The notes below the pieces were generated by a model that did no database searches, was not told where the DNA came from, and saw only the letters and a list, made by a program, of their open reading frames with translations. This document shows positions 5,082-47,558 of a DNA stretch of 64,000 nucleotides, in pieces. Source of the DNA: Utricularia gibba (Eukaryota > Plantae > Magnoliophyta); NCBI GenBank assembly GCA_002189035.1, contig CM007989.1:2418001-2482000 (forward strand), written 5' to 3'. Each line of letters starts with the position of its first letter. Position 1 is the first letter of the stretch. A program made the translations under genes and the position numbers.

Positions 5082-7301
<2,220 letters not shown>

Positions 7302-27538: not shown

Positions 27539-28954
27539 GCTAAGTATGATTTCGTGATGATAAACGAAAGCTTAAGAAACCCTTTTCAATCTAGACACAT
27601 AGCTCACACACTCCAGGAGGCCACGTAGCAAGGGAAAGCCAGAAAGAAAGCCTCTCTGGTCGAGTTGCAACACGAGGGAACTTGGAAACGATGAACGAGA
27701 TCATGATACCAAAAACACAGACGCGATTCTTAGAGGAACGAGTCATCAAAATGAAAGGAACAGCTTGAACTTCAACCGCATCACTTTCCTACTTGAACCA
27801 GAAGCGTTGATGGGTTTCAAGTGGATGCAACGCGTGCCTTCCCTTCCTCTTTATAGAACGGAAAACTCCCCCCCATCTTATGTCAAAACCTGGTAAAACT
27901 CAAACCCAATTGCAGTGAGAAGGTAAGTTCCCAGAAATTACCGCCTGATAAGCTCATGACCGTGAGTTCCTGGCTGGGAGAGGTACCGACAAGATATCCT
28001 TTTCAGCTCATAATGCACGAAATAATTGATTCTCCTTTCTTTAATGCAAGATTGTTTGACTTGTGAGATTATTGGGTAGCCTTGTCCTGGTTCATTTTAT
28101 CTTGTCTGGAACAACCCAGGAAGCTTCCTTGCATGCCAAAACCTTTATATTTTATTGCAATATGATTTTTTTTTCTTATAGAGAAAGTGATGTTGATGAG
28201 CACAACTTTGTAAATTGTGGTTGAACATAGTTATGATTAGATTATATAGTTTTTATCCATTAAAAAATAAGGAAAAAATAAGAAAATTGAGAATTTTGTT
28301 TTCAATAGTAAATTAAAATTAATAAATAATAAAAATTCTTTGATGATAAGAATTGATCACTTGAATTAAATGTTGATTTCAAAATTAATTTGAGATTTAA
28401 ATGCAGAACATGATAAGTATATAGATGAGTGTGTACCAATTTTTATAAATCGATTAAATTCCACTCATTAGTTTATTAATGGATTTTGATTAAATCATTT
28501 TGAAAAATGAGAAATATAAATAGTAAATTATTTTTTATAATTCAATTTAGTAAATGAAAAAATATAAATATGTATACACATTTTAAAAACTATTATAACT
28601 CAAAATTATATAGAAATATTCAAATATTATTATAAAATATATTTAAAATTTATGTAATATTTAAAAACATAAAAAAAAAACACAAAAAATAAGTTTCTCT
28701 GAGCTTGCGCTCCAAATCGTCGTCGAGAAACTCCAGCAAGAAATGGACATATTGCCGGCGAAAGCTGGGTCGGGATCGTCTCCGCGTTGGTGGGCGGAGC
28801 TCGAAATCCTGTTCGTCGGGGCTGCCTGATTCAAACCGGGGCGGTGACCCGCCCTTCATTTCTGTATTCTGGTTATGGATTTCTTGTCACAGACTGACAG
28901 TTGCGTCGTAACGACGCTCTCCCGGAGAAGAAAGACACTACTACAGTTCAAGAT

Positions 28955-31900
28955 TCAAGCTCCCAATCTCATCTCCTGCAAGGAGTACTTGAGGACTCTC
29001 TTCAGCGTAGCAACGACGTCTTTGATCTCGATTCTTTCACGAGGGTTTGCCATGGAACAGCGCAACGCCAAGTTCATCACTGAAGACAAGCAGTCCATTC
29101 TGACGGCCACGTTCGGACAGTTGCGCTTCAGCAGCCTTCCATCCACTGCCTCCATTGCTCCGTCAGCAACGGAATGCCTCACCCAATCCCTCAGGGTTAA
29201 CTCCTCTGAAAACTCCTCGGCCGTGGGTCTTTTCCCGGTGAACACTTCCATCAACAAAATGCCAAAGCTGTAGATGTCGCACTTGGTTGACACCAGGCCT
29301 TCACAGCCGTATTCTGTGCAACAAAAAGTCATGAAAGTCCTGAACTTTCCACAGGGGAAGGTTCAAAGGAGAAGAAATTACCTGGTGCGATGTAGCCCAA
29401 TGTAGCCATGGTAGCCGTTTGGGAGCAATCCATCCCTTCCAGTAGCTTAGCAATCCCAAAGTCACTCAGATGTGCAGTCATATCCTCATCCAAAAGTATG
29501 TTGCTTGGTTTGATATCACAATGGACGATCGGAGTTATGCAGTGCTCATGAAGATACTCGAGTGCACAAGCAATGTCGGTTACGATCGATAATCTCTGAA
29601 GGAGGTTCAAGAAATGATCTTCCCTGTGAAGCCATGTCTCCAGACTGCCCTTGGGCATGTACTCCATGACAATTGCTTTGATATCAGCATTAGAACAAAC
29701 GCTGATTACTCTGCAGAGGTTTCTATGGCGCAGGCTGCAGAACATTTGGCATTCTACATGGAAGCTTCTCAAGGCTCTTTCAGTTTGTACGTTGAATACC
29801 TTAACTGCAGCTATTTGTCCATCCATGAGAAGTGCTTTATAGACAGAACCATATGCTCCCCTGCCAATCAGGAGACCATTGTGGAGATTTGCAGTTGCCC
29901 GAATAAGCTCATAGTGTGATATGCGAGTCGGGCTTGCGACTAGAGGGAGCTCTTGCTCGACAATGTTCCTTGTGCGCCGCGAAGTCCATCTGTAGGCCAG
30001 GAACAGGACACATAACACACAAATAGCTGATACCAAAACAGAGACGGAAATGGCTATTCTTGGGATGTGGTTCCGGGGGTTTCTTGGTCTTTCCGTTGCA
30101 TAAGGAAGACAAGGAGGAAGCATTTGCCCCCCACAAAGACCCGGGTTACCAAGAAAACTATATGCTGTAAAAGTAGAGAACTGGCCCCCAACAGGGATAG
30201 GCCCTGAGAGAAAATTGTGTGCAACGTTGAACGTCGACAAGAAACTGAGTTCAGCCAAAGAAGATGGGATGCTTCCAGTCAAATTATTGAAAGACAAATC
30301 CAAACTTTCCAGGCTCTTCATTTCGGACAATGTGTCTGGAATAGGACCAGATAGGCTATTATGCGTTAAATCGAGAACATGCAACTCCTTCAGATTTCCA
30401 AACTCGGACCAGATGGATCCGTTAAGATGATTGTATGCAAGTGCCAGTGTTGGAGGAAACATTAAAAATCGTCTATAATAAAGAGCAGTTGTGTTCCGTC
30501 TCTTAAAAATAGGGAAGCCTGAGGAAACATCTTCACGCCTGATTACATTACCATTTATGAGGCTCTCCATTTCGGTAAGTTCAACAGGGATCTCTCCGGA
30601 CAACCTGTTAAAAGACATGTCTAAGTAAAAGAGTGATGACATGTTGCCAAACCAAGTTGGAATTGAACCAGTTAACTTGTTCACTGACAAATCTAACAGC
30701 TGCAAGTTCCTACACCTATTCAACCACTCAGGAATATGACCATGTAGATCACAGTCTGCAAGTACAAGTATCCTGAGTTCAGGGAACTGCAAACTGTTAC
30801 TACTTGGCATTTTCTCATCCCTGAAGTTCAGAGTAAGGAGTAAGGTAGTCAGATTTCGACAGTGCTGGAAGATCTCCAAGGCTCCAGTAATGTTAGTTAC
30901 ACTAGAATTCGAGAGAGAGATGGAAGAAAGGCTAGAAAAATTCTTGAAACTCTCAGGGATTTGCCCAGAAAAATTGATCCTTGCAAAGTTTATACTTCTT
31001 AGCAGTGGACAATTAGAAAGAGTTTCAGGAATCGGCCCATGAAAGCGATTAGTAGCCAAATTAAGCGAAACAAGTTTAACCATAGCTGAACAGTTAATAC
31101 TGATAGTACCATTCAGGGTATTGTTTCTCAGTGTAAGAGATGTAATTGTCTTAGAGTTGGCCAATGAACCCGGTATTCCACCTGTTAAACGGTTGGACTG
31201 AGCCGCAAAGTTTTCCAACTGCTCAAATCTGTGAAACACATCTGGAAGATGTCCAGAGAAGCGATTCAGAGACAAATCAAGGTTCACAAGCTTAGACAGA
31301 TTCCCAATACCAAAACTCAGCTGCCCTGAAAATTGATTCTCATGCAAATACAAGTCCTCTAACCAATGCAGCAGAAACAGATTTTCAGGCAGTTCACTGG
31401 TGAGAGAATTTGAGCCGATATAAAGTCTTTTTAATGAAGTGCAATTCCCAACTTCAGGAAAAAGTATCCCACTGAAATAATTGTCAGTCAAATCCAAAAC
31501 AGAAATACTGGATGAATTGATGCAGATACCAGCAGGAATTTGGCCGACGATTCGGTTCCCAGAAATATTGAAAATCTTGATAGATTGCAGGTTCATGGCC
31601 CTGGGTAACGGCCCGACTATGGAATTTGCGCTCAAATCCAAAATCTGCAACTTGGGCAAATGCAAAACCGAGACAGGAATCGACCCATTGAACATGTTTC
31701 TGGAGAGATTGAGAACTATAAGCTGATCCAGCATCCCCAACGATTCAGAGATGTTACCGGAAAGCCCTCTATTTCCAAGCTCCAGTCTTGCCACCCTACT
31801 GGAGTTGTCGCAATTGATACCCGGCCAAGAGCAGCAGTCGCCCAAATCAAAATCCCATTCAGAAAAACGACTCCTCGAATCAAGTCGCTCATTGAAACGC

Positions 31901-32004
31901 CTCAGGGAACTTAAGTCGGTGGCATGACATGCTGAGTTCGGGGCTTGTGAGGCAGAAGAAACCCAGAAGCCCATGAAAACCACGCACAGAACCAGCACAC
32001 TCAT
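28955..32004 (-). CDS. LRR receptor-like kinase with a PSKR1-like ectodomain and an LRR-XII-type non-RD kinase (about 993 aa; exons 32004-29382 and 29313-28955)
   Basis: Signal peptide, Cys-pair N-cap, LRRs with an island domain, GNPGLCG cap, TM helix, kinase with HCDIKPSN and DFG; 68-nt GT-AG intron at GYIAP/EYG; the spliced length of 2982 nt is in frame. Confidence 0.92.
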
Positions 32005-35000
32005 ATTGCACCTCTCTACAATCAAAAAATGGGATACAATCATTACCAAAATGAAGTTCTCTCATTGTTCTTTCACTGGAGTTCAGAAGTCTTGTCAACC
32101 AATCTGACCAGCTGACGGCACGGCGATAATGAATGTTTCAAATTGTGGAGACGTACGCTTTCAAATCCCGTTAATGCGTAGAATCGGTCGAAGTCCGGTT
32201 CGGCTGGGAACCGGAGTCAACACACATAATACCATTCTTTTAAAAAACAAAATCAAATATTTTTATTCTTAAATTGAAATGTAATAAATCATTATTTTTA
32301 TGTTCCTTCATATCATTAAACAACTAAATCACCAAATAACAGACATAAAAAAACCATATTAGCACTAAATAAATATTAAGTATTCATATAAGTGTATAAG
32401 CATCCGGTAAGTGATTTAAGATTTTAAATATATGATGTAAGATAAAATATATTTTATAATTTTAGATTTAAAATATATTTGATAGATGAATGTATATGTC
32501 TTATATTTTATAATGAAAAAATATTTGACTTATGTTTTTAAATGATTGGTTTTATATTTATTTTGAAATGAAATTGGGGGAAGGATAAATTATGAATTTT
32601 AATATATTTTAAATCAATTTTAAATTAAAATGACGTAATATCTTTAAAACCATTACATATAAATGTAGAATAAAATTCGTTCTAAACTTATCCGTGGAGC
32701 CATAAACGGCCTTATCAAACACACATTTAAATGAAAGACACTTCAAAAATACTATTAAATCACCCTAGGGCTTTAGGATTTCGAGCCAAGTTGAGTTTTA
32801 GCATTTTAAAGCTTAGATTCTACGAATTTTCATATACTCCTTTGAATTGAATTGTCGATTGATCTATGCGCATAAAAGCATGTATTTGAGTCGTGTTTAC
32901 GACACAAGTAGACCTTATTGTAAAAAACTTGCAGAAGTGAATCATTAGCTGCTCTTTTAATATTGTCATCTCAATTATTTGTTTGTGATTTTTTAGCTGG
33001 GGATAGATTACGTTGTTCTAACAGGATTTAGTGTTGGTCCCCATTGTTTCCCTTTGTCGGAAAGCAAAACACAGGTGCAGCTTATCTTATTCTGCTCACG
33101 GGTTGCAAGGAGTTGCGCACCGATGCCCCCACAGCGTCGAGAACTGGCGGAAGATGGAAGCCATGTGTTCTGCGTTGTCACAGGTTGATGAAGGGGCTGG
33201 TGAAATCCTTCAATTCTTGAGTTGCTCTTCCAAAATCTGTGGGGTTTTCGAAATGGAATGTCTGAATGATTGAGAGACAGTTAGTTGTCTGAGCTGATGT
33301 TTTCAAACCTCGACTGAAAACCAGTCACTCGATCATGGAGGCGCAACAGGGTTGTAGACATGGACACAGCAATGCTCGTGAATTGTGATACAACCAACAA
33401 GAGCAACGTCTGTCCCCACAAGAACATGCTCCTCGTTCTTTCCAGTCAATTGAGGCGTTGGAGAGAGCCCCATGGAAATCATTCATAGGGATTGTGGTGT
33501 ATGCAAGCAATCCTCTTTCATGTGATGCGTTTCCCATATTGAAAACATGTAAACTTTCCACTATCATAATAGCTTTTCCTGATAAAGCTCACACCTTTTG
33601 GTGCTACGGTCGAGATCTTTAGGGTTTTCGATTGACCCACCCAATTTCCATTGACCCGAAAACCAGTATACCATTTGGGTGACCCGATATCCCATCACCT
33701 TCACCTTTTTGTAGATCGACAATCCGGATTTTTGTCTTAACCAGCACACGTGTTTTTGTCTTAACCAGATTGCCTTGTCTGCTTTCGATACTTCAAAAGC
33801 ACTTGTGCATGCTGGCATTTTCTTTCTTCAATAGTCCCTTGTTCGGAGAAGAAGGTGGGGTTTTGGAGTAGCAGGGTCCCATCTGTAATTAGAGACAAAT
33901 GCGGGGGGTGATTTGCAATAAAACAAAATAATTCAATAATTAAATGGAGCACCGAATCAGCCAATCATTGTGTCGTTCTCATTAATTTAAGGCACGCATA
34001 TTCTTCACTAGTTGGGAGCCACGTGCCCAACAACACAACATAAAGTGCCCTAAATCACCCTGTCAGCACCACCCTTCAGCCCTAATTGCCCTTTCACATG
34101 CCAATAAAACACGTCTCAAAAGCATCACGCGCAATATCATTAATCAACGATTAATACAAAAAGTGATTAAATAAATCATAGGGTGTACGTTGCATGACAC
34201 CTGGCGCTCTACGATTGGTGCTCTAGTACATCACGCTTAGTTCTCTAGGGGCGGGCCCTACCACGAGATTCGAGAGGCACCCATCCCGGTTCACGTCTTC
34301 CTCATCTCGTGTTGTTGCACCTAGCTTTCTTTATGCACAAAATTAATGGTGATTAATATAAATAATTATAAATTATATCTACATTAAATATTGCGCTCCT
34401 GGTTTTTAATCTGGAAAATTCCAAATTTAGAAAAACGCGATAAGCAATAAAAAAATAATCAAAATCATTGATGACTCATTCATATCCTCAACGTCAACTG
34501 TTCGCTAATTACAGGTCATTTTTTAATTAAGTATGCTCACTTTTTTTCACACAGTCAAAAAAGGATCACTAGATATGTAACAAATTCAAAATGATAATGG
34601 TGGGATTAGGCGTATACAGTTAAATCATTCTCATTATAATAATCTAATTCTTCTAAATTAATTTTTATAATGATTAACGAACAAAAACCTATATATTAAA
34701 GATGATTTTAATGTAAATTGTATGATCTGTATGTTATAATTCAAATATATTATTAATTAAATCACGATACTTTAATCTCTGGACTTAGTAGAAGAATATT
34801 GTTGAAATCTATGCTTTCAAGCAACGGTTGATGTTGTGATGGGTGGATTTTGATTCATAAACTTAAGCCCCAATTCACCTTTGGAATATGAATAGACCTT
34901 CGAAATTCGATAACTCAAAATCATTAATTGTCATTAAAACAACATAAATTGACCAAATAATTTCTTTATTTATTTGGGAATGTATTTTATAAATGTTGCA

Positions 35001-46061: not shown

Positions 46062-47558
46062 CTATTGATCTGTTGTTTCTGGTTCAGACAAGTCCTCATC
46101 TGTCATGATGGTTAGAAATTCAAGCGCCGTCACAATGTCTGCAATAAGAGGGCGGGTACTCGGCTCATCCTGTAGGCATGTTGCTGCTATGCCAAGAGCT
46201 TGATGAAGGCTTTTCACTGGATAACTTCCTTGCAGCAATGGATCCACCATTGATGTGAAGTTCCTCCTGTCCTTGAAAAGCGGTTGTGCCTGCAAAAGTT
46301 TTGGACTTTCATCATCTATGCGAAAATACAAAATCAGGCAGGGGTTGAACTGCTTTGCTGAATAAGATCATTGAGATGCATTTACCCAAGAAACGAGATT
46401 CTCCTCTTCAAGAGGCTTGGTGTTGTCGACCACTCTTCTTCCGGTGATAATCTGTAGGAGCACGACTCCGAAGCTGTAGACATCAGAGCTTGCTGTCAGT
46501 TGGCCGGTCTGAGCATACTCCGGTGCACAATAGCCATACATTCCCATCAACCTAGTTTCCTCATGGCCTACAAGTCCCGTCTTGGTTTGTCCGAATCCGC
46601 ACAGCTTAGGATTGAATTCATCGTCCAACAAAATGTTTGCTAGTTTCAAGTCCTGGAAAATGACTTGAGGGTTGACAGAATCGTGCAAGTACTCGAGCCC
46701 TTTAGCTGCCCCGGATGCTATTTTCATCCTGGTTTGCCAATCCAGGGGCGTTTTCTCTGGGGACAAGTCTTGAACACACGAAAAACCCGAGCTTCAATAT
46801 GAAGATATTTACATATATGTAAACTACATTGATAAACACTTACCAACTAAGTGATCCTCCAAGGATCCATTGCACATGTATTCAAACACAAGGATTCTCT
46901 GTTGGCCATCCGTGCAGTATCCAACCAAATTGACAAGATTCGGATGATGAATCGAACTCAATGTAACAATCTCAGAAAGGAAATCTTTGTTTCCCGCTGC
47001 CCCATTTCTGTCAAGCTGCTTCACAGCCACTGTCTGAATCCAAAACGAATGAAATGAGCAATTTACACCATGAAATGCTAACCAATTCATCGATCACCAA
47101 GAAAAAGAATTCACTTGATTTGTTCTCCGGATGATTCCCTTGTAAACTTTCGCAAATCCCCCCTCTCCCACAAAAAGTTCAGAACTGAAATTATCCGTCG
47201 CAACCGCCAACTCCCGAAAGGTAAAAACTTGCGCAGAAGGTGTCAAGGATCTATGCCTTAGCACATTTTCCGCAATTAACCGCTGCTTCCCCCGCCTAAA
47301 TAACATCAGCACATCCTCAAATTGACCCACAAACAAACGAACCCCAAAATCAGAACAAGAATGACGATTCTTACAAGTGTTCAACGAAATGCTTCTAGCG
47401 ATAGTCGATGATGCATCGGAATGATCATATTTGTTTGCGGGGGTGGTTCCAAAGATAGAACTCCGGGAAGATTTCAGCATTGTCTTTTTCATTGTCCCCG
47501 TTCTCCTCATCCTGCAACACGTCACCGGAGCTTGCAATGCCTGTTTGAGGATTGACAA
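46062..47558 (-). CDS. RLCK-VII (PBL-like) cytoplasmic kinase, probable pseudokinase
   Basis: [65 protein letters not shown]; start codon uncertain. Confidence 0.85.

What the first reader, a model, noticed from the sequence alone, without database searches (positions are those of the whole stretch)
28955..32004. Natural chimeric receptor: phytosulfokine-receptor ectodomain fused to an LRR-XII (EFR/XA21-type) non-RD kinase
Seen: the ectodomain follows PSKR1 linearly, from RVARLELGNRGLSG through ESFKNFSSLS and QHCRNLTTLLLTLNF, the island ...FPIFKRRN...FPPT and IWSEFGNLKELHV, to GGQFSTF. After the GNPGLCG cap (about 30127-30150) the protein switches type: RISHYEL..AT, AVKVFNVQ, RSFHVEC, LRHRNL, HCDIKPSN (non-RD, 29523-29515) and one intron at GYIAP/EYG. 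Established: PSKR1/2 (LRR-X) have intronless coding regions and RD kinases (HRDIKSSN), whereas non-RD kinases with this intron position typify LRR-XII immune receptors. Inference: recombination at the shared GNxxLCG cap produced an intact receptor that could route a PSK-like ligand (growth/damage peptide or pathogen mimic) into immune-type signalling. I know of no described natural example.
Basis: partly seen in the sequence, partly recalled or inferred. Interest (0 to 1): 0.9.

Follow-up and report, generated by a model that had tools for sequence, protein, structure and literature searches.

The report
Natural PSKR1-ectodomain / LRR-XII-kinase chimeric receptor
This compact Lamiales genome (probably a bladderwort) has an intact, transcribed receptor gene that joins the outside half of the phytosulfokine growth-peptide receptor to the membrane anchor and kinase of an EFR/XA21-type immune receptor, which is a natural version of a domain swap so far known mainly from engineered constructs.

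Summary
The minus-strand gene at 28955-32004 has two exons and a 68-nt intron and encodes an intact 993-aa LRR receptor kinase.

- **Ectodomain (residues 1-632):** it is PSKR1-type. It is 63-65% identical to Lamiales PSKR1, sister to Genlisea PSKR1 (support 100/99), and its model matches PDB 4Z64 at TM 0.91.
- **Rest of the protein (from about residue 633):** the linker, membrane helix, juxtamembrane segment and kinase are LRR-XII. The kinase is non-RD (HCD), sits inside a Lamiales XII clade, and has the XII-specific phase-1 intron at GYIAP|E.
- **Not an assembly artefact:** independent DNA and RNA runs bridge the breakpoint, and three RNA runs show the splice.
- **Kept intact:** alleles about 1% and 3% divergent keep the reading frame. 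157 of 165 near-invariant PSKR1 positions and 84 of 88 near-invariant XII kinase positions are retained.
- **Origin:** a paralogue 81% identical over part of the ectodomain (ending in a canonical PSKR1 cap) indicates a lineage-specific duplicate.
- **Uniqueness:** three database searches found no other protein with this combination.

Function is inferred, not shown. The likely mechanism is that a PSK-like ligand recruits a SERK co-receptor and activates XII-type (immune-like) output.

This is a new variant of a known kind. The scan had not noted it before.

The parts
28955..32004 (-). Whole coding region of the chimeric LRR receptor kinase (993 aa, 2 exons)
   Evidence: ORF and splice model. 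RNA contigs cover 28749-32114.
29382..32004 (-). Exon 1 (residues 1-874 plus the first base of Glu875)
   Evidence: The splice joint 29313/29382 is seen in three RNA runs.
29314..29381 (-). Single 68-nt GT..AG phase-1 intron at GYIAP|EYG, homologous to the LRR-XII kinase intron
   Evidence: A 68-nt skip is seen in RNA runs X1, X2 and X4. The position and phase are identical, and the donor (CCAG|gtaa) nearly so, in the Erythranthe and Abeliophyllum XII genes.
28955..29313 (-). Exon 2: kinase C-lobe (subdomains VIII-XI) and the stop codon
31945..32004 (-). Predicted signal peptide (residues 1-20)
   Evidence: Hydrophobic N-terminus read from the sequence. The AF2 model has low confidence over residues 1-22.
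30109..31944 (-). PSKR1-type ectodomain (residues 21-632): N-cap, LRRs, island, last four LRRs and C-cap
   Evidence: The AF2 model matches 4Z64_A at TM 0.91/0.96, rmsd 1.9 A.
30448..30543 (-). Island domain (about residues 488-519, FPIFKRRN...FPPT), the PSK-binding strand region
   Evidence: Aligned to the AtPSKR1 island D502-Q517. F500, R502 and R503 correspond to At F506, K508 and R509. Low pLDDT over 490-514, like the apo island loop.
30085..30132 (-). Breakpoint interval (residues 625-640); most likely at or just after LPPC (30109-30120)
   Evidence: The cap Cys-Cys spacing is PSKR-type. The linker length is XII-type. G[LV]PPC occurs in both families.
29890..30108 (-). XII-type extracellular linker, membrane helix (about 29989-30054) and short juxtamembrane segment ending in RISHYEL
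   Evidence: Alignment with Lamiales PSKR1 and XII proteins.
29382..29889 (-). LRR-XII non-RD kinase, N-lobe to activation segment. All catalytic motifs are present: G-loop, AVK Lys, alpha-C Glu, HCD, DFG, APE
29515..29523 (-). HCD (non-RD) catalytic-loop triplet

Best explanation
SHOWN:
- This is one real, intact, transcribed and correctly spliced gene.
- Its product joins a PSKR1 ectodomain (signal peptide to the second cap cysteine, residues 1-632) to the extracellular linker, membrane helix, juxtamembrane segment and non-RD kinase of an LRR-XII receptor (residues about 633-993).

INFERRED (origin):
- A lineage-specific duplicate of PSKR1, made after the split from Genlisea, was fused at the DNA level to the 3' part of an LRR-XII gene.
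- Candidate mechanisms are illegitimate recombination, gene conversion or a deletion.
- The junction lies at or next to the short G[LV]PPC motif that both families share.
- The XII intron was retained, so the donor was genomic DNA and not a retrocopy.

INFERRED (mechanism of action):
- The ectodomain still binds PSK or a close sulfated-peptide relative on the island and inner LRR surface.
- Ligand binding orders the island, and the last four LRRs recruit a SERK/BAK1 co-receptor. Both parent families use SERK co-receptors.
- The RD kinase of the SERK then trans-activates the non-RD XII kinase.
- Output is therefore XII-type (pattern-triggered-immunity-like: RLCK, ROS, MAPK) rather than the PSKR1 growth output.

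My confidence is above 0.9 for the structure and origin. It is about 0.45 for the ligand and output part.
For: Gene model and intact ORF.

Ectodomain is PSKR1:
- Best hits are Lamiales PSKR1 at 63-65% identity.
- phmmer against PDB gives AtPSKR1 4Z63 at E 1.4e-188, colinear over residues 23-632.
- In the maximum-likelihood tree it is sister to Genlisea aurea PSKR1 (100/99), nested in core-Lamiales PSKR1.
- The AF2 model (pLDDT 87.9) gives 4Z64_A as top Foldseek hit, TM 0.91/0.96. The next fold class scores 0.6-0.7.

Kinase is XII:
- Hits are At3g47570/Xa21-like.
- The tree splits PSKR from XII at 100/100, with the query inside a Lamiales-only XII subclade (81/98).
- The kinase has HCD.
- The phase-1 intron is identical to those of two Lamiales XII genes, whereas PSKR1 loci are intronless.
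- The membrane helix, juxtamembrane segment and linker are XII-like.

Not an artefact:
- RNA contig X1 29887-30534 (0 mismatches) and the 2013 DNA contig X5 29645-30163 bridge the breakpoint.
- The splice is seen in three RNA runs.
- A copy about 97% identical in run X11 has pieces at 30005-30153 that also bridge it.

Constraint:
- The reading frame is intact in alleles about 1% and about 3% divergent. One of these carries an in-frame 9-nt deletion.
- 157 of 165 near-invariant PSKR1 ectodomain columns are kept; the canonical Genlisea protein misses 9.
- 84 of 88 near-invariant XII kinase columns are kept, within the normal XII range.
- Kinase pN/pS is 0.19.

Ligand and co-receptor sites (residue roles from PMC7918699 and PMC10834447):
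- At R300, R349, D445, F506 and R509 are kept, and K508 is replaced by R.
- SERK contacts F596, S598 and T619 and the QxxT motif are kept.

Paralogue and age:
- An X11 contig is 81% identical over 30169-30789 and then continues as a canonical PSKR1 cap. Genlisea is 64.6% identical on the same stretch.

Precedent that such swaps signal:
- The kinase domain encodes output specificity.
- An engineered BRI1-XA21 chimera triggers immune signalling on brassinolide (PMC5879659).
Against: - No binding, phosphorylation or signalling data exist.
- Two positions that matter in AtPSKR1 are changed in a way no other PSKR1 in the alignment shows.
  - At N424 (a sulfate contact; N or S in 42 of 42 others) is Asp417 here. 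A negative charge faces a sulfate.
  - At S623 (a SERK1 contact; S in 41 of 42 others) is Tyr615.
- Polymorphism in the ectodomain is mostly non-synonymous (14 non-synonymous to 3 synonymous, pN/pS about 1.4). This fits relaxed constraint or a shifting specificity as well as it fits PSK binding. The counts are small (Fisher p = 0.039).
- Both halves sit on long branches: ectodomain 0.59, against 0.32 for Genlisea; kinase 0.85, against a median of 0.16.
- The fusion mechanism is not observed.
  - No parental XII gene or TE lies in the window.
  - No synteny was found to either parental locus type.
- The paralogue is known only from one 1-kb contig.
Confidence: 0.6

Rival explanations
1. The fusion is real and expressed, but the ectodomain no longer perceives PSK. 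It is drifting or being selected towards a different ligand, such as a microbial or prey-derived peptide or a PSK mimic. In that case the gene works as a new pattern-recognition receptor built on a PSKR scaffold.
For: - Ectodomain polymorphism is 14 non-synonymous to 3 synonymous (pN/pS about 1.4), against 4 to 6 in the kinase.
- The sulfate-contact Asn/Ser is uniquely replaced by Asp417, and a SERK-contact Ser by Tyr615.
- The ectodomain branch is 1.8 times longer than that of Genlisea PSKR1.
- A canonical-looking paralogue could keep the PSK function.
Against: - Six of seven PSK-contact positions are kept or conservatively replaced.
- 157 of 165 near-invariant PSKR1 columns are kept, no worse than canonical Genlisea PSKR1.
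- The island has the normal core-Lamiales length.
- SNP counts are small and come from contigs of one other accession.
Confidence: 0.2
2. The fusion is an evolutionary accident that is transcribed but has no signalling role of its own. It could be neutral and on its way to loss, or a dominant-negative or decoy receptor that titrates PSK or SERKs.
For: - Man et al. 2020 (PMC7318236) found that fusion genes are mostly young, confined to single taxa and probably short-lived.
- Overall pN/pS is about 0.6.
- Both branches are long.
- A sister species' transcriptome shows ectodomain homologues but not this kinase.
Against: - The 993-codon frame is intact in three alleles up to about 3% apart, and the only indel seen is in frame.
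- Every catalytic motif and 84 of 88 near-invariant XII kinase positions are retained.
- Kinase pN/pS is 0.19.
- It has diverged 19% in nucleotides from its paralogue without a single disabling change.
- It is expressed and spliced in four RNA runs from two studies.
Confidence: 0.15
3. The chimera is an assembly artefact that joins a PSKR1 gene and an LRR-XII gene.
For: No positive evidence was found. It was only a general concern because the two families share LRR and cap motifs.
Against: - Contigs from independent studies bridge residues 612-790: RNA X1 29887-30534, overlapping RNA X2 pieces, DNA X5 29645-30163, and X11 30005-30153.
- A divergent allele (X4) shows the same structure.
- The reading frame runs through the junction without a break.
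Confidence: 0.02
4. This is not a fusion but an old, separate receptor family, or a PSKR kinase that converged on the non-RD state.
For: None beyond the long branches of both halves.
Against: - The ectodomain is nested deep inside core-Lamiales PSKR1, next to Genlisea.
- The kinase is nested inside a Lamiales XII subclade, separated from PSKR kinases by a branch of 1.62 with 100/100 support.
- The XII-specific intron, membrane helix and juxtamembrane segment are present.
- GC3 differs between the halves, 0.446 against 0.554.
- No similar protein was found elsewhere.
Confidence: 0.02

Closest known systems
PSKR1 (LRR-RLK subgroup Xb; AtPSKR1/DcPSKR1, PDB 4Z63/4Z64/4Z5W)
   Same: - The ectodomain is colinear, with an island before the last four LRRs.
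- It is 50-52% identical to the solved structures and 63-65% identical to Lamiales orthologues.
- Most PSK- and SERK-contact residues are kept.
- The predicted fold matches at TM 0.91.
   Different: - There is no PSKR membrane helix, long juxtamembrane segment or RD kinase.
- The gene has an intron.
- Asp replaces the sulfate-contact Asn/Ser, and Tyr replaces a SERK-contact Ser.
LRR-RLK subgroup XII (EFR/XA21/FLS2 class; At3g47570-like Lamiales clade)
   Same: - The kinase is non-RD (HCD) and is placed inside XII in the tree.
- It has RISxxEL, KSF..EC-type and LRHRNL-type motifs.
- It has the phase-1 intron at GYIAP|E.
- The linker is short and basic, and the membrane helix and juxtamembrane segment are XII-type.
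   Different: - The ectodomain is not XII-type. It has an island and the QxxT motif, and it groups with PSKR1.
- The kinase sits on an unusually long branch.
Engineered BRI1-XA21 chimera (cited in Hohmann et al. 2018, PMC5879659) and other ectodomain/kinase swaps
   Same: - It also joins an island-bearing Xb growth-hormone ectodomain to an XII immune kinase.
- The engineered version gives immune signalling on hormone perception.
- This shows that the kinase sets the output and that SERK-dependent activation is interchangeable.
   Different: - The engineered chimera is man-made and uses BRI1 rather than PSKR1.
- The gene here arose naturally, is kept intact in diverged alleles, and takes its membrane helix and juxtamembrane segment from the XII parent.
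Maize Zm00001d023611 (Man et al. 2020, PMC7318236): RLK domain converted by a member of another LRR-RLK lineage
   Same: It is a natural LRR-RLK whose two domains have different phylogenetic histories.
   Different: - The maize gene has a new start codon and a pseudogenised remainder of the LRR domain.
- Both of its parents lie within clade XI_XIIb.
- The gene here is full length and crosses from subgroup Xb to XII.
PSKR-like LRR receptor-like proteins (kinase-less PSKR ectodomains; Ngou et al. 2024, PMC10834447; about 680-710-aa hits)
   Same: They show that the PSKR ectodomain has repeatedly been uncoupled from its own kinase at about the same boundary.
   Different: Those proteins end after the membrane helix. 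This one acquired a different kinase.

Membership tests
PSKR1 / LRR-RLK Xb | Ectodomain groups phylogenetically with PSKR1 | tested here: met
   Sister to Genlisea aurea PSKR1 (100/99), inside core-Lamiales PSKR1. Best hits are all PSKR1.
PSKR1 / LRR-RLK Xb | Island domain placed before the last four LRRs, and a PSKR1-like fold | tested here: met
   Colinear with 4Z63 over residues 23-632. The AF2 model matches 4Z64_A at TM 0.91/0.96.
PSKR1 / LRR-RLK Xb | PSK-contact residues (At R300, R349, N424, D445, F506, K508, R509) | tested here: inconclusive
   Six of seven are kept or conservatively replaced. N424 is Asp417, a state not seen in 42 other PSKR1 sequences. Residue roles come from PMC7918699.
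PSKR1 / LRR-RLK Xb | SERK-binding C3 region (QxxT/S motif; At F596, S598, T619, S623) | tested here: met
   GQFST is present. F588, S590 and T611 are kept, and only S623 is changed, to Tyr615. The motif is defined in PMC10834447.
PSKR1 / LRR-RLK Xb | RD kinase of the Xb clade (HRDIKSSN) | tested here: not met
   The kinase has HCDIKPSN and falls inside XII, 100/100 away from PSKR kinases.
PSKR1 / LRR-RLK Xb | Intronless coding region | tested here: not met
   One 68-nt intron is present. PSKR1 is intronless in Erythranthe, Paulownia and Genlisea.
PSKR1 / LRR-RLK Xb | Binds sulfated PSK | not testable with these tools
   Needs a binding assay.
LRR-RLK XII (EFR/XA21 class) | Kinase groups phylogenetically with XII | tested here: met
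   Inside a Lamiales-only XII subclade (81/98), and the XII versus PSKR split is 100/100. 84 of 88 near-invariant XII columns are kept.
LRR-RLK XII (EFR/XA21 class) | Non-RD catalytic loop | tested here: met
   HCD at 29515-29523.
LRR-RLK XII (EFR/XA21 class) | Conserved phase-1 intron at GYIAP|EYG | tested here: met
   Same codon and phase, and the same CCAG|gtaa donor, in Erythranthe P0246 and Abeliophyllum P0164. Only two XII genes were checked.
LRR-RLK XII (EFR/XA21 class) | XII-type ectodomain (continuous LRRs, no island) | tested here: not met
   Identity to XII ectodomains is only 24-54% per 40-residue window (group means) and is always below the identity to PSKR1. An island is present.
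LRR-RLK XII (EFR/XA21 class) | Triggers pattern-triggered-immunity outputs | not testable with these tools
   Needs ROS, MAPK or defence-gene assays.

The most novel reading that the evidence does not exclude
A plant lineage that has lost much of its immune-receptor repertoire naturally rewired a growth and damage peptide signal to an immune kinase.
- The endogenous peptide PSK, or a microbial or prey-derived sulfated mimic, would be read by a PSKR1 ectodomain.
- That ectodomain is hard-wired to a non-RD LRR-XII kinase, so binding would trigger PTI-type defence instead of growth.
- This would be a naturally evolved counterpart of synthetic ectodomain/kinase swaps.
- It would also be a direct example of a receptor changing from development to immunity in one recombination step.
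Probability: 0.3. Interest if true: 0.85.

Novelty: new variant of a known kind. Interest (0 to 1): 0.66.

Why it matters
- Work with engineered chimeras has established that the ectodomain sets the input of an LRR receptor kinase and the kinase sets the output.
- Comparative genomics has proposed 'modular evolution' of these receptors (PMC10834447).
- Clear natural cases are scarce. What is missing is an intact, expressed receptor that crosses from a developmental subgroup (Xb) to the immune subgroup (XII).
- This gene is such a case.
  - Its breakpoint is mapped to about 15 residues.
  - A probable unfused paralogue is available for comparison.
  - It sits in a small genome.
- It gives a directly testable system for three questions.
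  - Can one recombination event convert a growth-peptide receptor into an immune-type receptor?
  - Can a non-RD XII kinase be driven from an island-type ectodomain in nature?
  - Which parts (linker, membrane helix, juxtamembrane segment) have to travel with the kinase?
- It may also guide the design of synthetic immune receptors.

Tried and rejected
- **Chimeric relatives.** I searched three ways and found none.
  - A junction-spanning search (residues 540-790) returned only XII proteins at 48% identity or less.
  - A motif scan of 355 retrieved proteins found no genuine island plus non-RD combination.
  - A full scan of 1.84 billion representatives was checked by hit. Every hit with a PSKR-like C-terminal ectodomain (at least 40% identity) has an RD kinase or no kinase at all.
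  - Caveats: only the top 120-150 hits are visible, clusters are collapsed at 50%, and Lentibulariaceae proteomes are poorly represented. The window's own protein is not in the database.
- **Synteny.** I looked for synteny that would identify the recipient locus.
  - ORFs flanking Erythranthe PSKR1, Erythranthe XII and Paulownia PSKR1 have no match in the window.
  - The DUF3755-PSKR1 pairing conserved in Erythranthe and Paulownia is absent here.
  - The result is uninformative given how rearranged this genome is.
- **A donor XII gene, TE or repeats next to the gene.** None was found.
- **The fusion in relatives.**
  - Organism C has ectodomain homologues only.
  - Organism D has almost nothing.
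  - Organism B has a near-identical 254-nt piece that stops at the cap.
  - Short contigs mean that absence is weak evidence.
- **Divergence-based dN/dS against Genlisea.** I rejected this because nucleotide identity is only about 65%, so synonymous sites are saturated.
- **Earlier scan notes.** A search for a canonical PSKR in this genome returned none.
Full report
**Observation**

The minus strand of 28955-32004 carries one long ORF followed by a short one. Reading the sequence gives this model:
- Exon 1 runs from the ATG at 32004 to 29382.
- A canonical GT..AG intron of 68 nt follows (29381-29314). It splits the Glu codon of GYIAP|EYG after its first base.
- Exon 2 runs from 29313 to the TGA at 28957-28955.

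The spliced product is 993 aa with no stops. Pfam finds an N-terminal LRR cap, many LRRs and one protein kinase domain split by the intron.

**Two halves of different type**

- Residues 1-640 retrieve only phytosulfokine receptor 1. The closest matches are Lamiales proteins (Handroanthus, Rehmannia, Paulownia, Sesamum, Penstemon, Genlisea) at 60-65% identity.
- Residues 660-874 retrieve only LRR-XII kinases (At3g47570-like, Xa21-like, 'FLS2'-named) at about 50-62% identity.
- Windowed identity to nine PSKR1 and eight XII proteins shows PSKR1 ahead over residues 1-620 and XII ahead over residues 690-993. Both are low in between.
- All 98 kinase-bearing proteins among the ectodomain hits have an RD catalytic loop. 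The kinase hits have HCD, like the query.

**Phylogeny**

The ectodomain tree has 39 rows and follows the species tree of asterids and Lamiales.
- It places the query as sister to Genlisea aurea PSKR1 with 100/99 support.
- The query's terminal branch is 0.59, against 0.32 for Genlisea.

The kinase tree has 44 rows.
- It separates PSKR kinases from XII kinases by a branch of 1.62 with 100/100 support.
- It places the query within a subclade made only of Lamiales XII genes (81/98).
- The query sits on a long terminal branch of 0.85, against a median of 0.16.

The genome is a Lamiales one. It is most likely a Lentibulariaceae (bladderwort) species, given the sister relationship to Genlisea and the very compact gene structure. 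This identification is my inference, because run and organism names are coded.

**Structure and functional residues of the ectodomain**

- The ectodomain aligns colinearly with AtPSKR1 (4Z63) over residues 23-632 at E 1.4e-188.
- An AlphaFold2 model built on 27 PSKR1 sequences has mean pLDDT 87.9. Only the signal peptide, the island loop (490-514) and the C-terminal tail (635-640) have low confidence. A flexible island loop is what is described for the ligand-free receptor (PMC7918699).
- Foldseek ranks the seven PSKR1 chains first (4Z64_A: TM 0.91/0.96, rmsd 1.9 A). Other LRR receptors follow at TM 0.4-0.7.
- I mapped the AtPSKR1 residues named in PMC7918699 onto a 43-sequence alignment.
  - R300, R349, D445, F506 and R509 are identical.
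  - K508 is Arg, as in 16 other PSKR1 sequences.
  - The SERK contacts F596, S598 and T619 are identical.
  - The QxxT motif for SERK binding (PMC10834447) is present as GQFST.
- Two positions are unique to this protein.
  - The sulfate-contacting N424 (Asn or Ser in all 42 others) is Asp417.
  - S623 (Ser in 41 of 42) is Tyr615.
- Of 165 columns that are nearly invariant in PSKR1 ectodomains, the query keeps 157. This is the same order as the canonical Genlisea protein, which misses 9.

**The kinase**

All catalytic signatures are present: Gly-rich loop, AVK lysine, alpha-C Glu, HCD, DFG and APE. The query keeps 84 of 88 columns that are at least 95% conserved in 80 XII kinases. Ordinary XII kinases miss 1 (median) and up to 6.

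**Breakpoint**

An alignment of the cap-to-kinase region with seven PSKR1 and six XII proteins shows the following:
- The cap still has the PSKR spacing between its two cysteines (LCG-x5-PC) and ends in LPPC. Genlisea and Erythranthe PSKR1 end in GLPPC.
- The following extracellular linker has the short XII length.
- The membrane helix lacks the PSKR GxGxG pattern.
- The helix is followed by an XII-like LAY..RR stop-transfer and a short juxtamembrane segment that leads into RISHYEL.
- XII proteins also carry G[LV]PPC at the same place.

The crossover therefore lies at or just after this shared pentapeptide. That is residues about 625-640, or 30085-30132, most likely 30109-30120.

GC3 differs between the halves, 0.446 against 0.554.

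**Gene structure as evidence of origin**

- PSKR1 is intronless in Erythranthe, Paulownia and Genlisea.
- Two Lamiales XII genes have a phase-1 intron at exactly the same Glu codon, with the same CCAG|gtaa donor.
- The 3' part therefore came from genomic XII DNA and not from a processed transcript.
- The junction lies inside a continuous exon, so this was not intron-mediated exon shuffling.
- No XII gene, transposon or repeat flanks the gene. Its neighbours are ordinary genes: a bHLH-ACT gene downstream and a QWRF gene upstream.
- No synteny with PSKR1 or XII loci of other Lamiales was detectable.
- The exact mechanism remains open. The candidates are deletion between neighbouring genes, ectopic recombination and gene conversion.

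**Reality and expression**

Nineteen public runs were found, eleven of which (all labelled organism A) hold a fifth or more of the sampled words of 29300-30700. Laying contigs on the gene shows the following:
- RNA contigs cover 28749-32114.
- One RNA contig (X1, 29887-30534, no mismatch) spans the breakpoint.
- Overlapping contigs in X2, and X4 contigs that abut within 10 nt (29950-30133 and 30143-30589), cover the same stretch.
- A DNA contig from an independent 2013 run (X5, 29645-30163) also spans it.
- The 68-nt splice is present in three RNA runs.
- X4 represents another accession with 28 substitutions and no indel.

At 80% stringency:
- A 2019 DNA run (X11) carries a copy about 97% identical. 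Pieces at 30005-30153 again bridge the breakpoint.
- One X11 allele has an in-frame 9-nt deletion in an RNPRN repeat of the linker.

**Selection**

Against the X4 allele there are 9 synonymous and 18 non-synonymous differences, giving pN/pS of about 0.6. They are unevenly spread:

| Region | Non-synonymous | Synonymous | pN/pS |
|---|---|---|---|
| Ectodomain | 14 | 3 | about 1.4 |
| Kinase | 4 | 6 | about 0.2 |

Fisher's exact test gives p = 0.039. The kinase is under purifying selection. The ectodomain is either relaxed or diversifying, as is usual for immune receptors. The numbers are small.

**Age and paralogue**

- Run X11 also contains a 1-kb contig that is only 81% identical to 30169-30789. 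Beyond 30169 it continues as sequence that reads ...PNSSFAGNQD on the coding strand, which is the canonical PSKR1 cap.
- On the same stretch the query is 64.6% identical to Genlisea PSKR1. The duplication that produced the fused copy therefore post-dates the split from Genlisea.
- The transcriptome of a related species (organism C) has matches at 80-87% over the ectodomain (30169-32004). These share substitutions with the X11 paralogue.
- Organism C has nothing over the membrane helix and kinase except a 37-nt catalytic-loop motif. This suggests, weakly, that the fusion is restricted to the organism A lineage.

**Uniqueness**

- A junction-spanning search returned only ordinary XII proteins at 48% identity or less.
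- An exhaustive HMMER scan of 1.84 billion cluster representatives gave no protein that combines a PSKR-like C-terminal ectodomain with a non-RD kinase.
- Kinase-less PSKR-like proteins of about 680-710 aa are common (PMC10834447). The PSKR ectodomain has therefore been separated from its kinase many times near this boundary.

**Mechanism (inferred)**

- Both parent families are activated by ligand-dependent recruitment of SERK/BAK1 co-receptors.
- Swap experiments show that the kinase domain encodes output specificity. A BRI1-XA21 chimera elicits immune signalling on brassinolide (PMC5879659).
- A PSKR1 ectodomain with intact island, C3 region and QxxT motif, placed on an XII membrane helix, juxtamembrane segment and kinase, is therefore expected to be signalling-competent from the moment of fusion. 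It should convert perception of PSK, or of a related sulfated peptide, into XII-type output.
- An earlier first-reader note (unchecked) reports a PSK precursor gene elsewhere in this genome.
- Lentibulariaceae have unusually few XII, RLP and NLR genes (PMC9579050). This makes an extra XII-kinase receptor proportionally more significant.
- Against a simple PSK receptor model stand Asp417, Tyr615 and the excess of non-synonymous ectodomain polymorphism.

**Comparison and novelty**

- By ectodomain this is a PSKR1. By kinase, intron, membrane helix and juxtamembrane segment it is an LRR-XII. It fails a defining feature of each family and should be filed as an Xb/XII hybrid.
- The kind of event has been reported. 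Man et al. 2020 (PMC7318236) describe a maize gene whose RLK domain was converted by another lineage, but that gene is truncated. Ngou et al. 2024 note that 5.3% of 'island plus four LRR' receptor kinases are not Xb by kinase, without describing them.
- I found no description of an intact PSKR-ectodomain/XII-kinase receptor.
- Verdict: a real feature and a new variant of a known kind. The function is not yet demonstrated.

Noticed in passing
window 30066-30082 (deletion reported at 30074): In DNA run X11, one of two alleles lacks 9 nt in the RNPRN direct repeat of the extracellular linker. This is an in-frame three-residue length polymorphism just outside the membrane helix.
   Followed up: partly
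window 30134: A minority variant in RNA run X4 (depth 6.5 of 15.7, near a contig end) would change the conserved first cap cysteine (Cys624) to Tyr. It may be an error or a defective allele.
   Followed up: no
window 46086-47300 (-): A second protein-kinase gene lies here, about 30% identical to PSKR and XII kinase domains. No LRR region was detected next to it.
   Followed up: no
window 5082-5861 (+): An ORF with a protein kinase domain (Pfam Pkinase, E 1.4e-44), unrelated to the receptor.
   Followed up: no
window 32219-32264 / 32517-32562: An AT-rich 46-nt inverted repeat (78% complementary, 252 nt apart) lies 215-560 nt upstream of the start codon. It could be a MITE-like element in the promoter.
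   Followed up: no
L001 4104-7744 and L005 1-8129: A DUF3755 gene lies immediately upstream of PSKR1 in both Erythranthe and Paulownia, so this micro-synteny is conserved. No DUF3755 homologue is present anywhere in the 64-kb window.
   Followed up: partly
proteins P0048, P0073, P0088, P0096, P0101 and others; P0383, P0394, P0398, P0415 and others: Many eudicots (mostly rosids, plus a few Asteraceae) encode proteins of about 680-710 aa with a PSKR1-like ectodomain and no kinase. They are about 46-54% identical to this ectodomain.
   Followed up: no
window as a whole: Gene density is very high and introns are tiny: PPR, kinase, glutaredoxin, bHLH, receptor, QWRF and Dof genes all fall within 64 kb. 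This fits a miniaturised genome.
   Followed up: no
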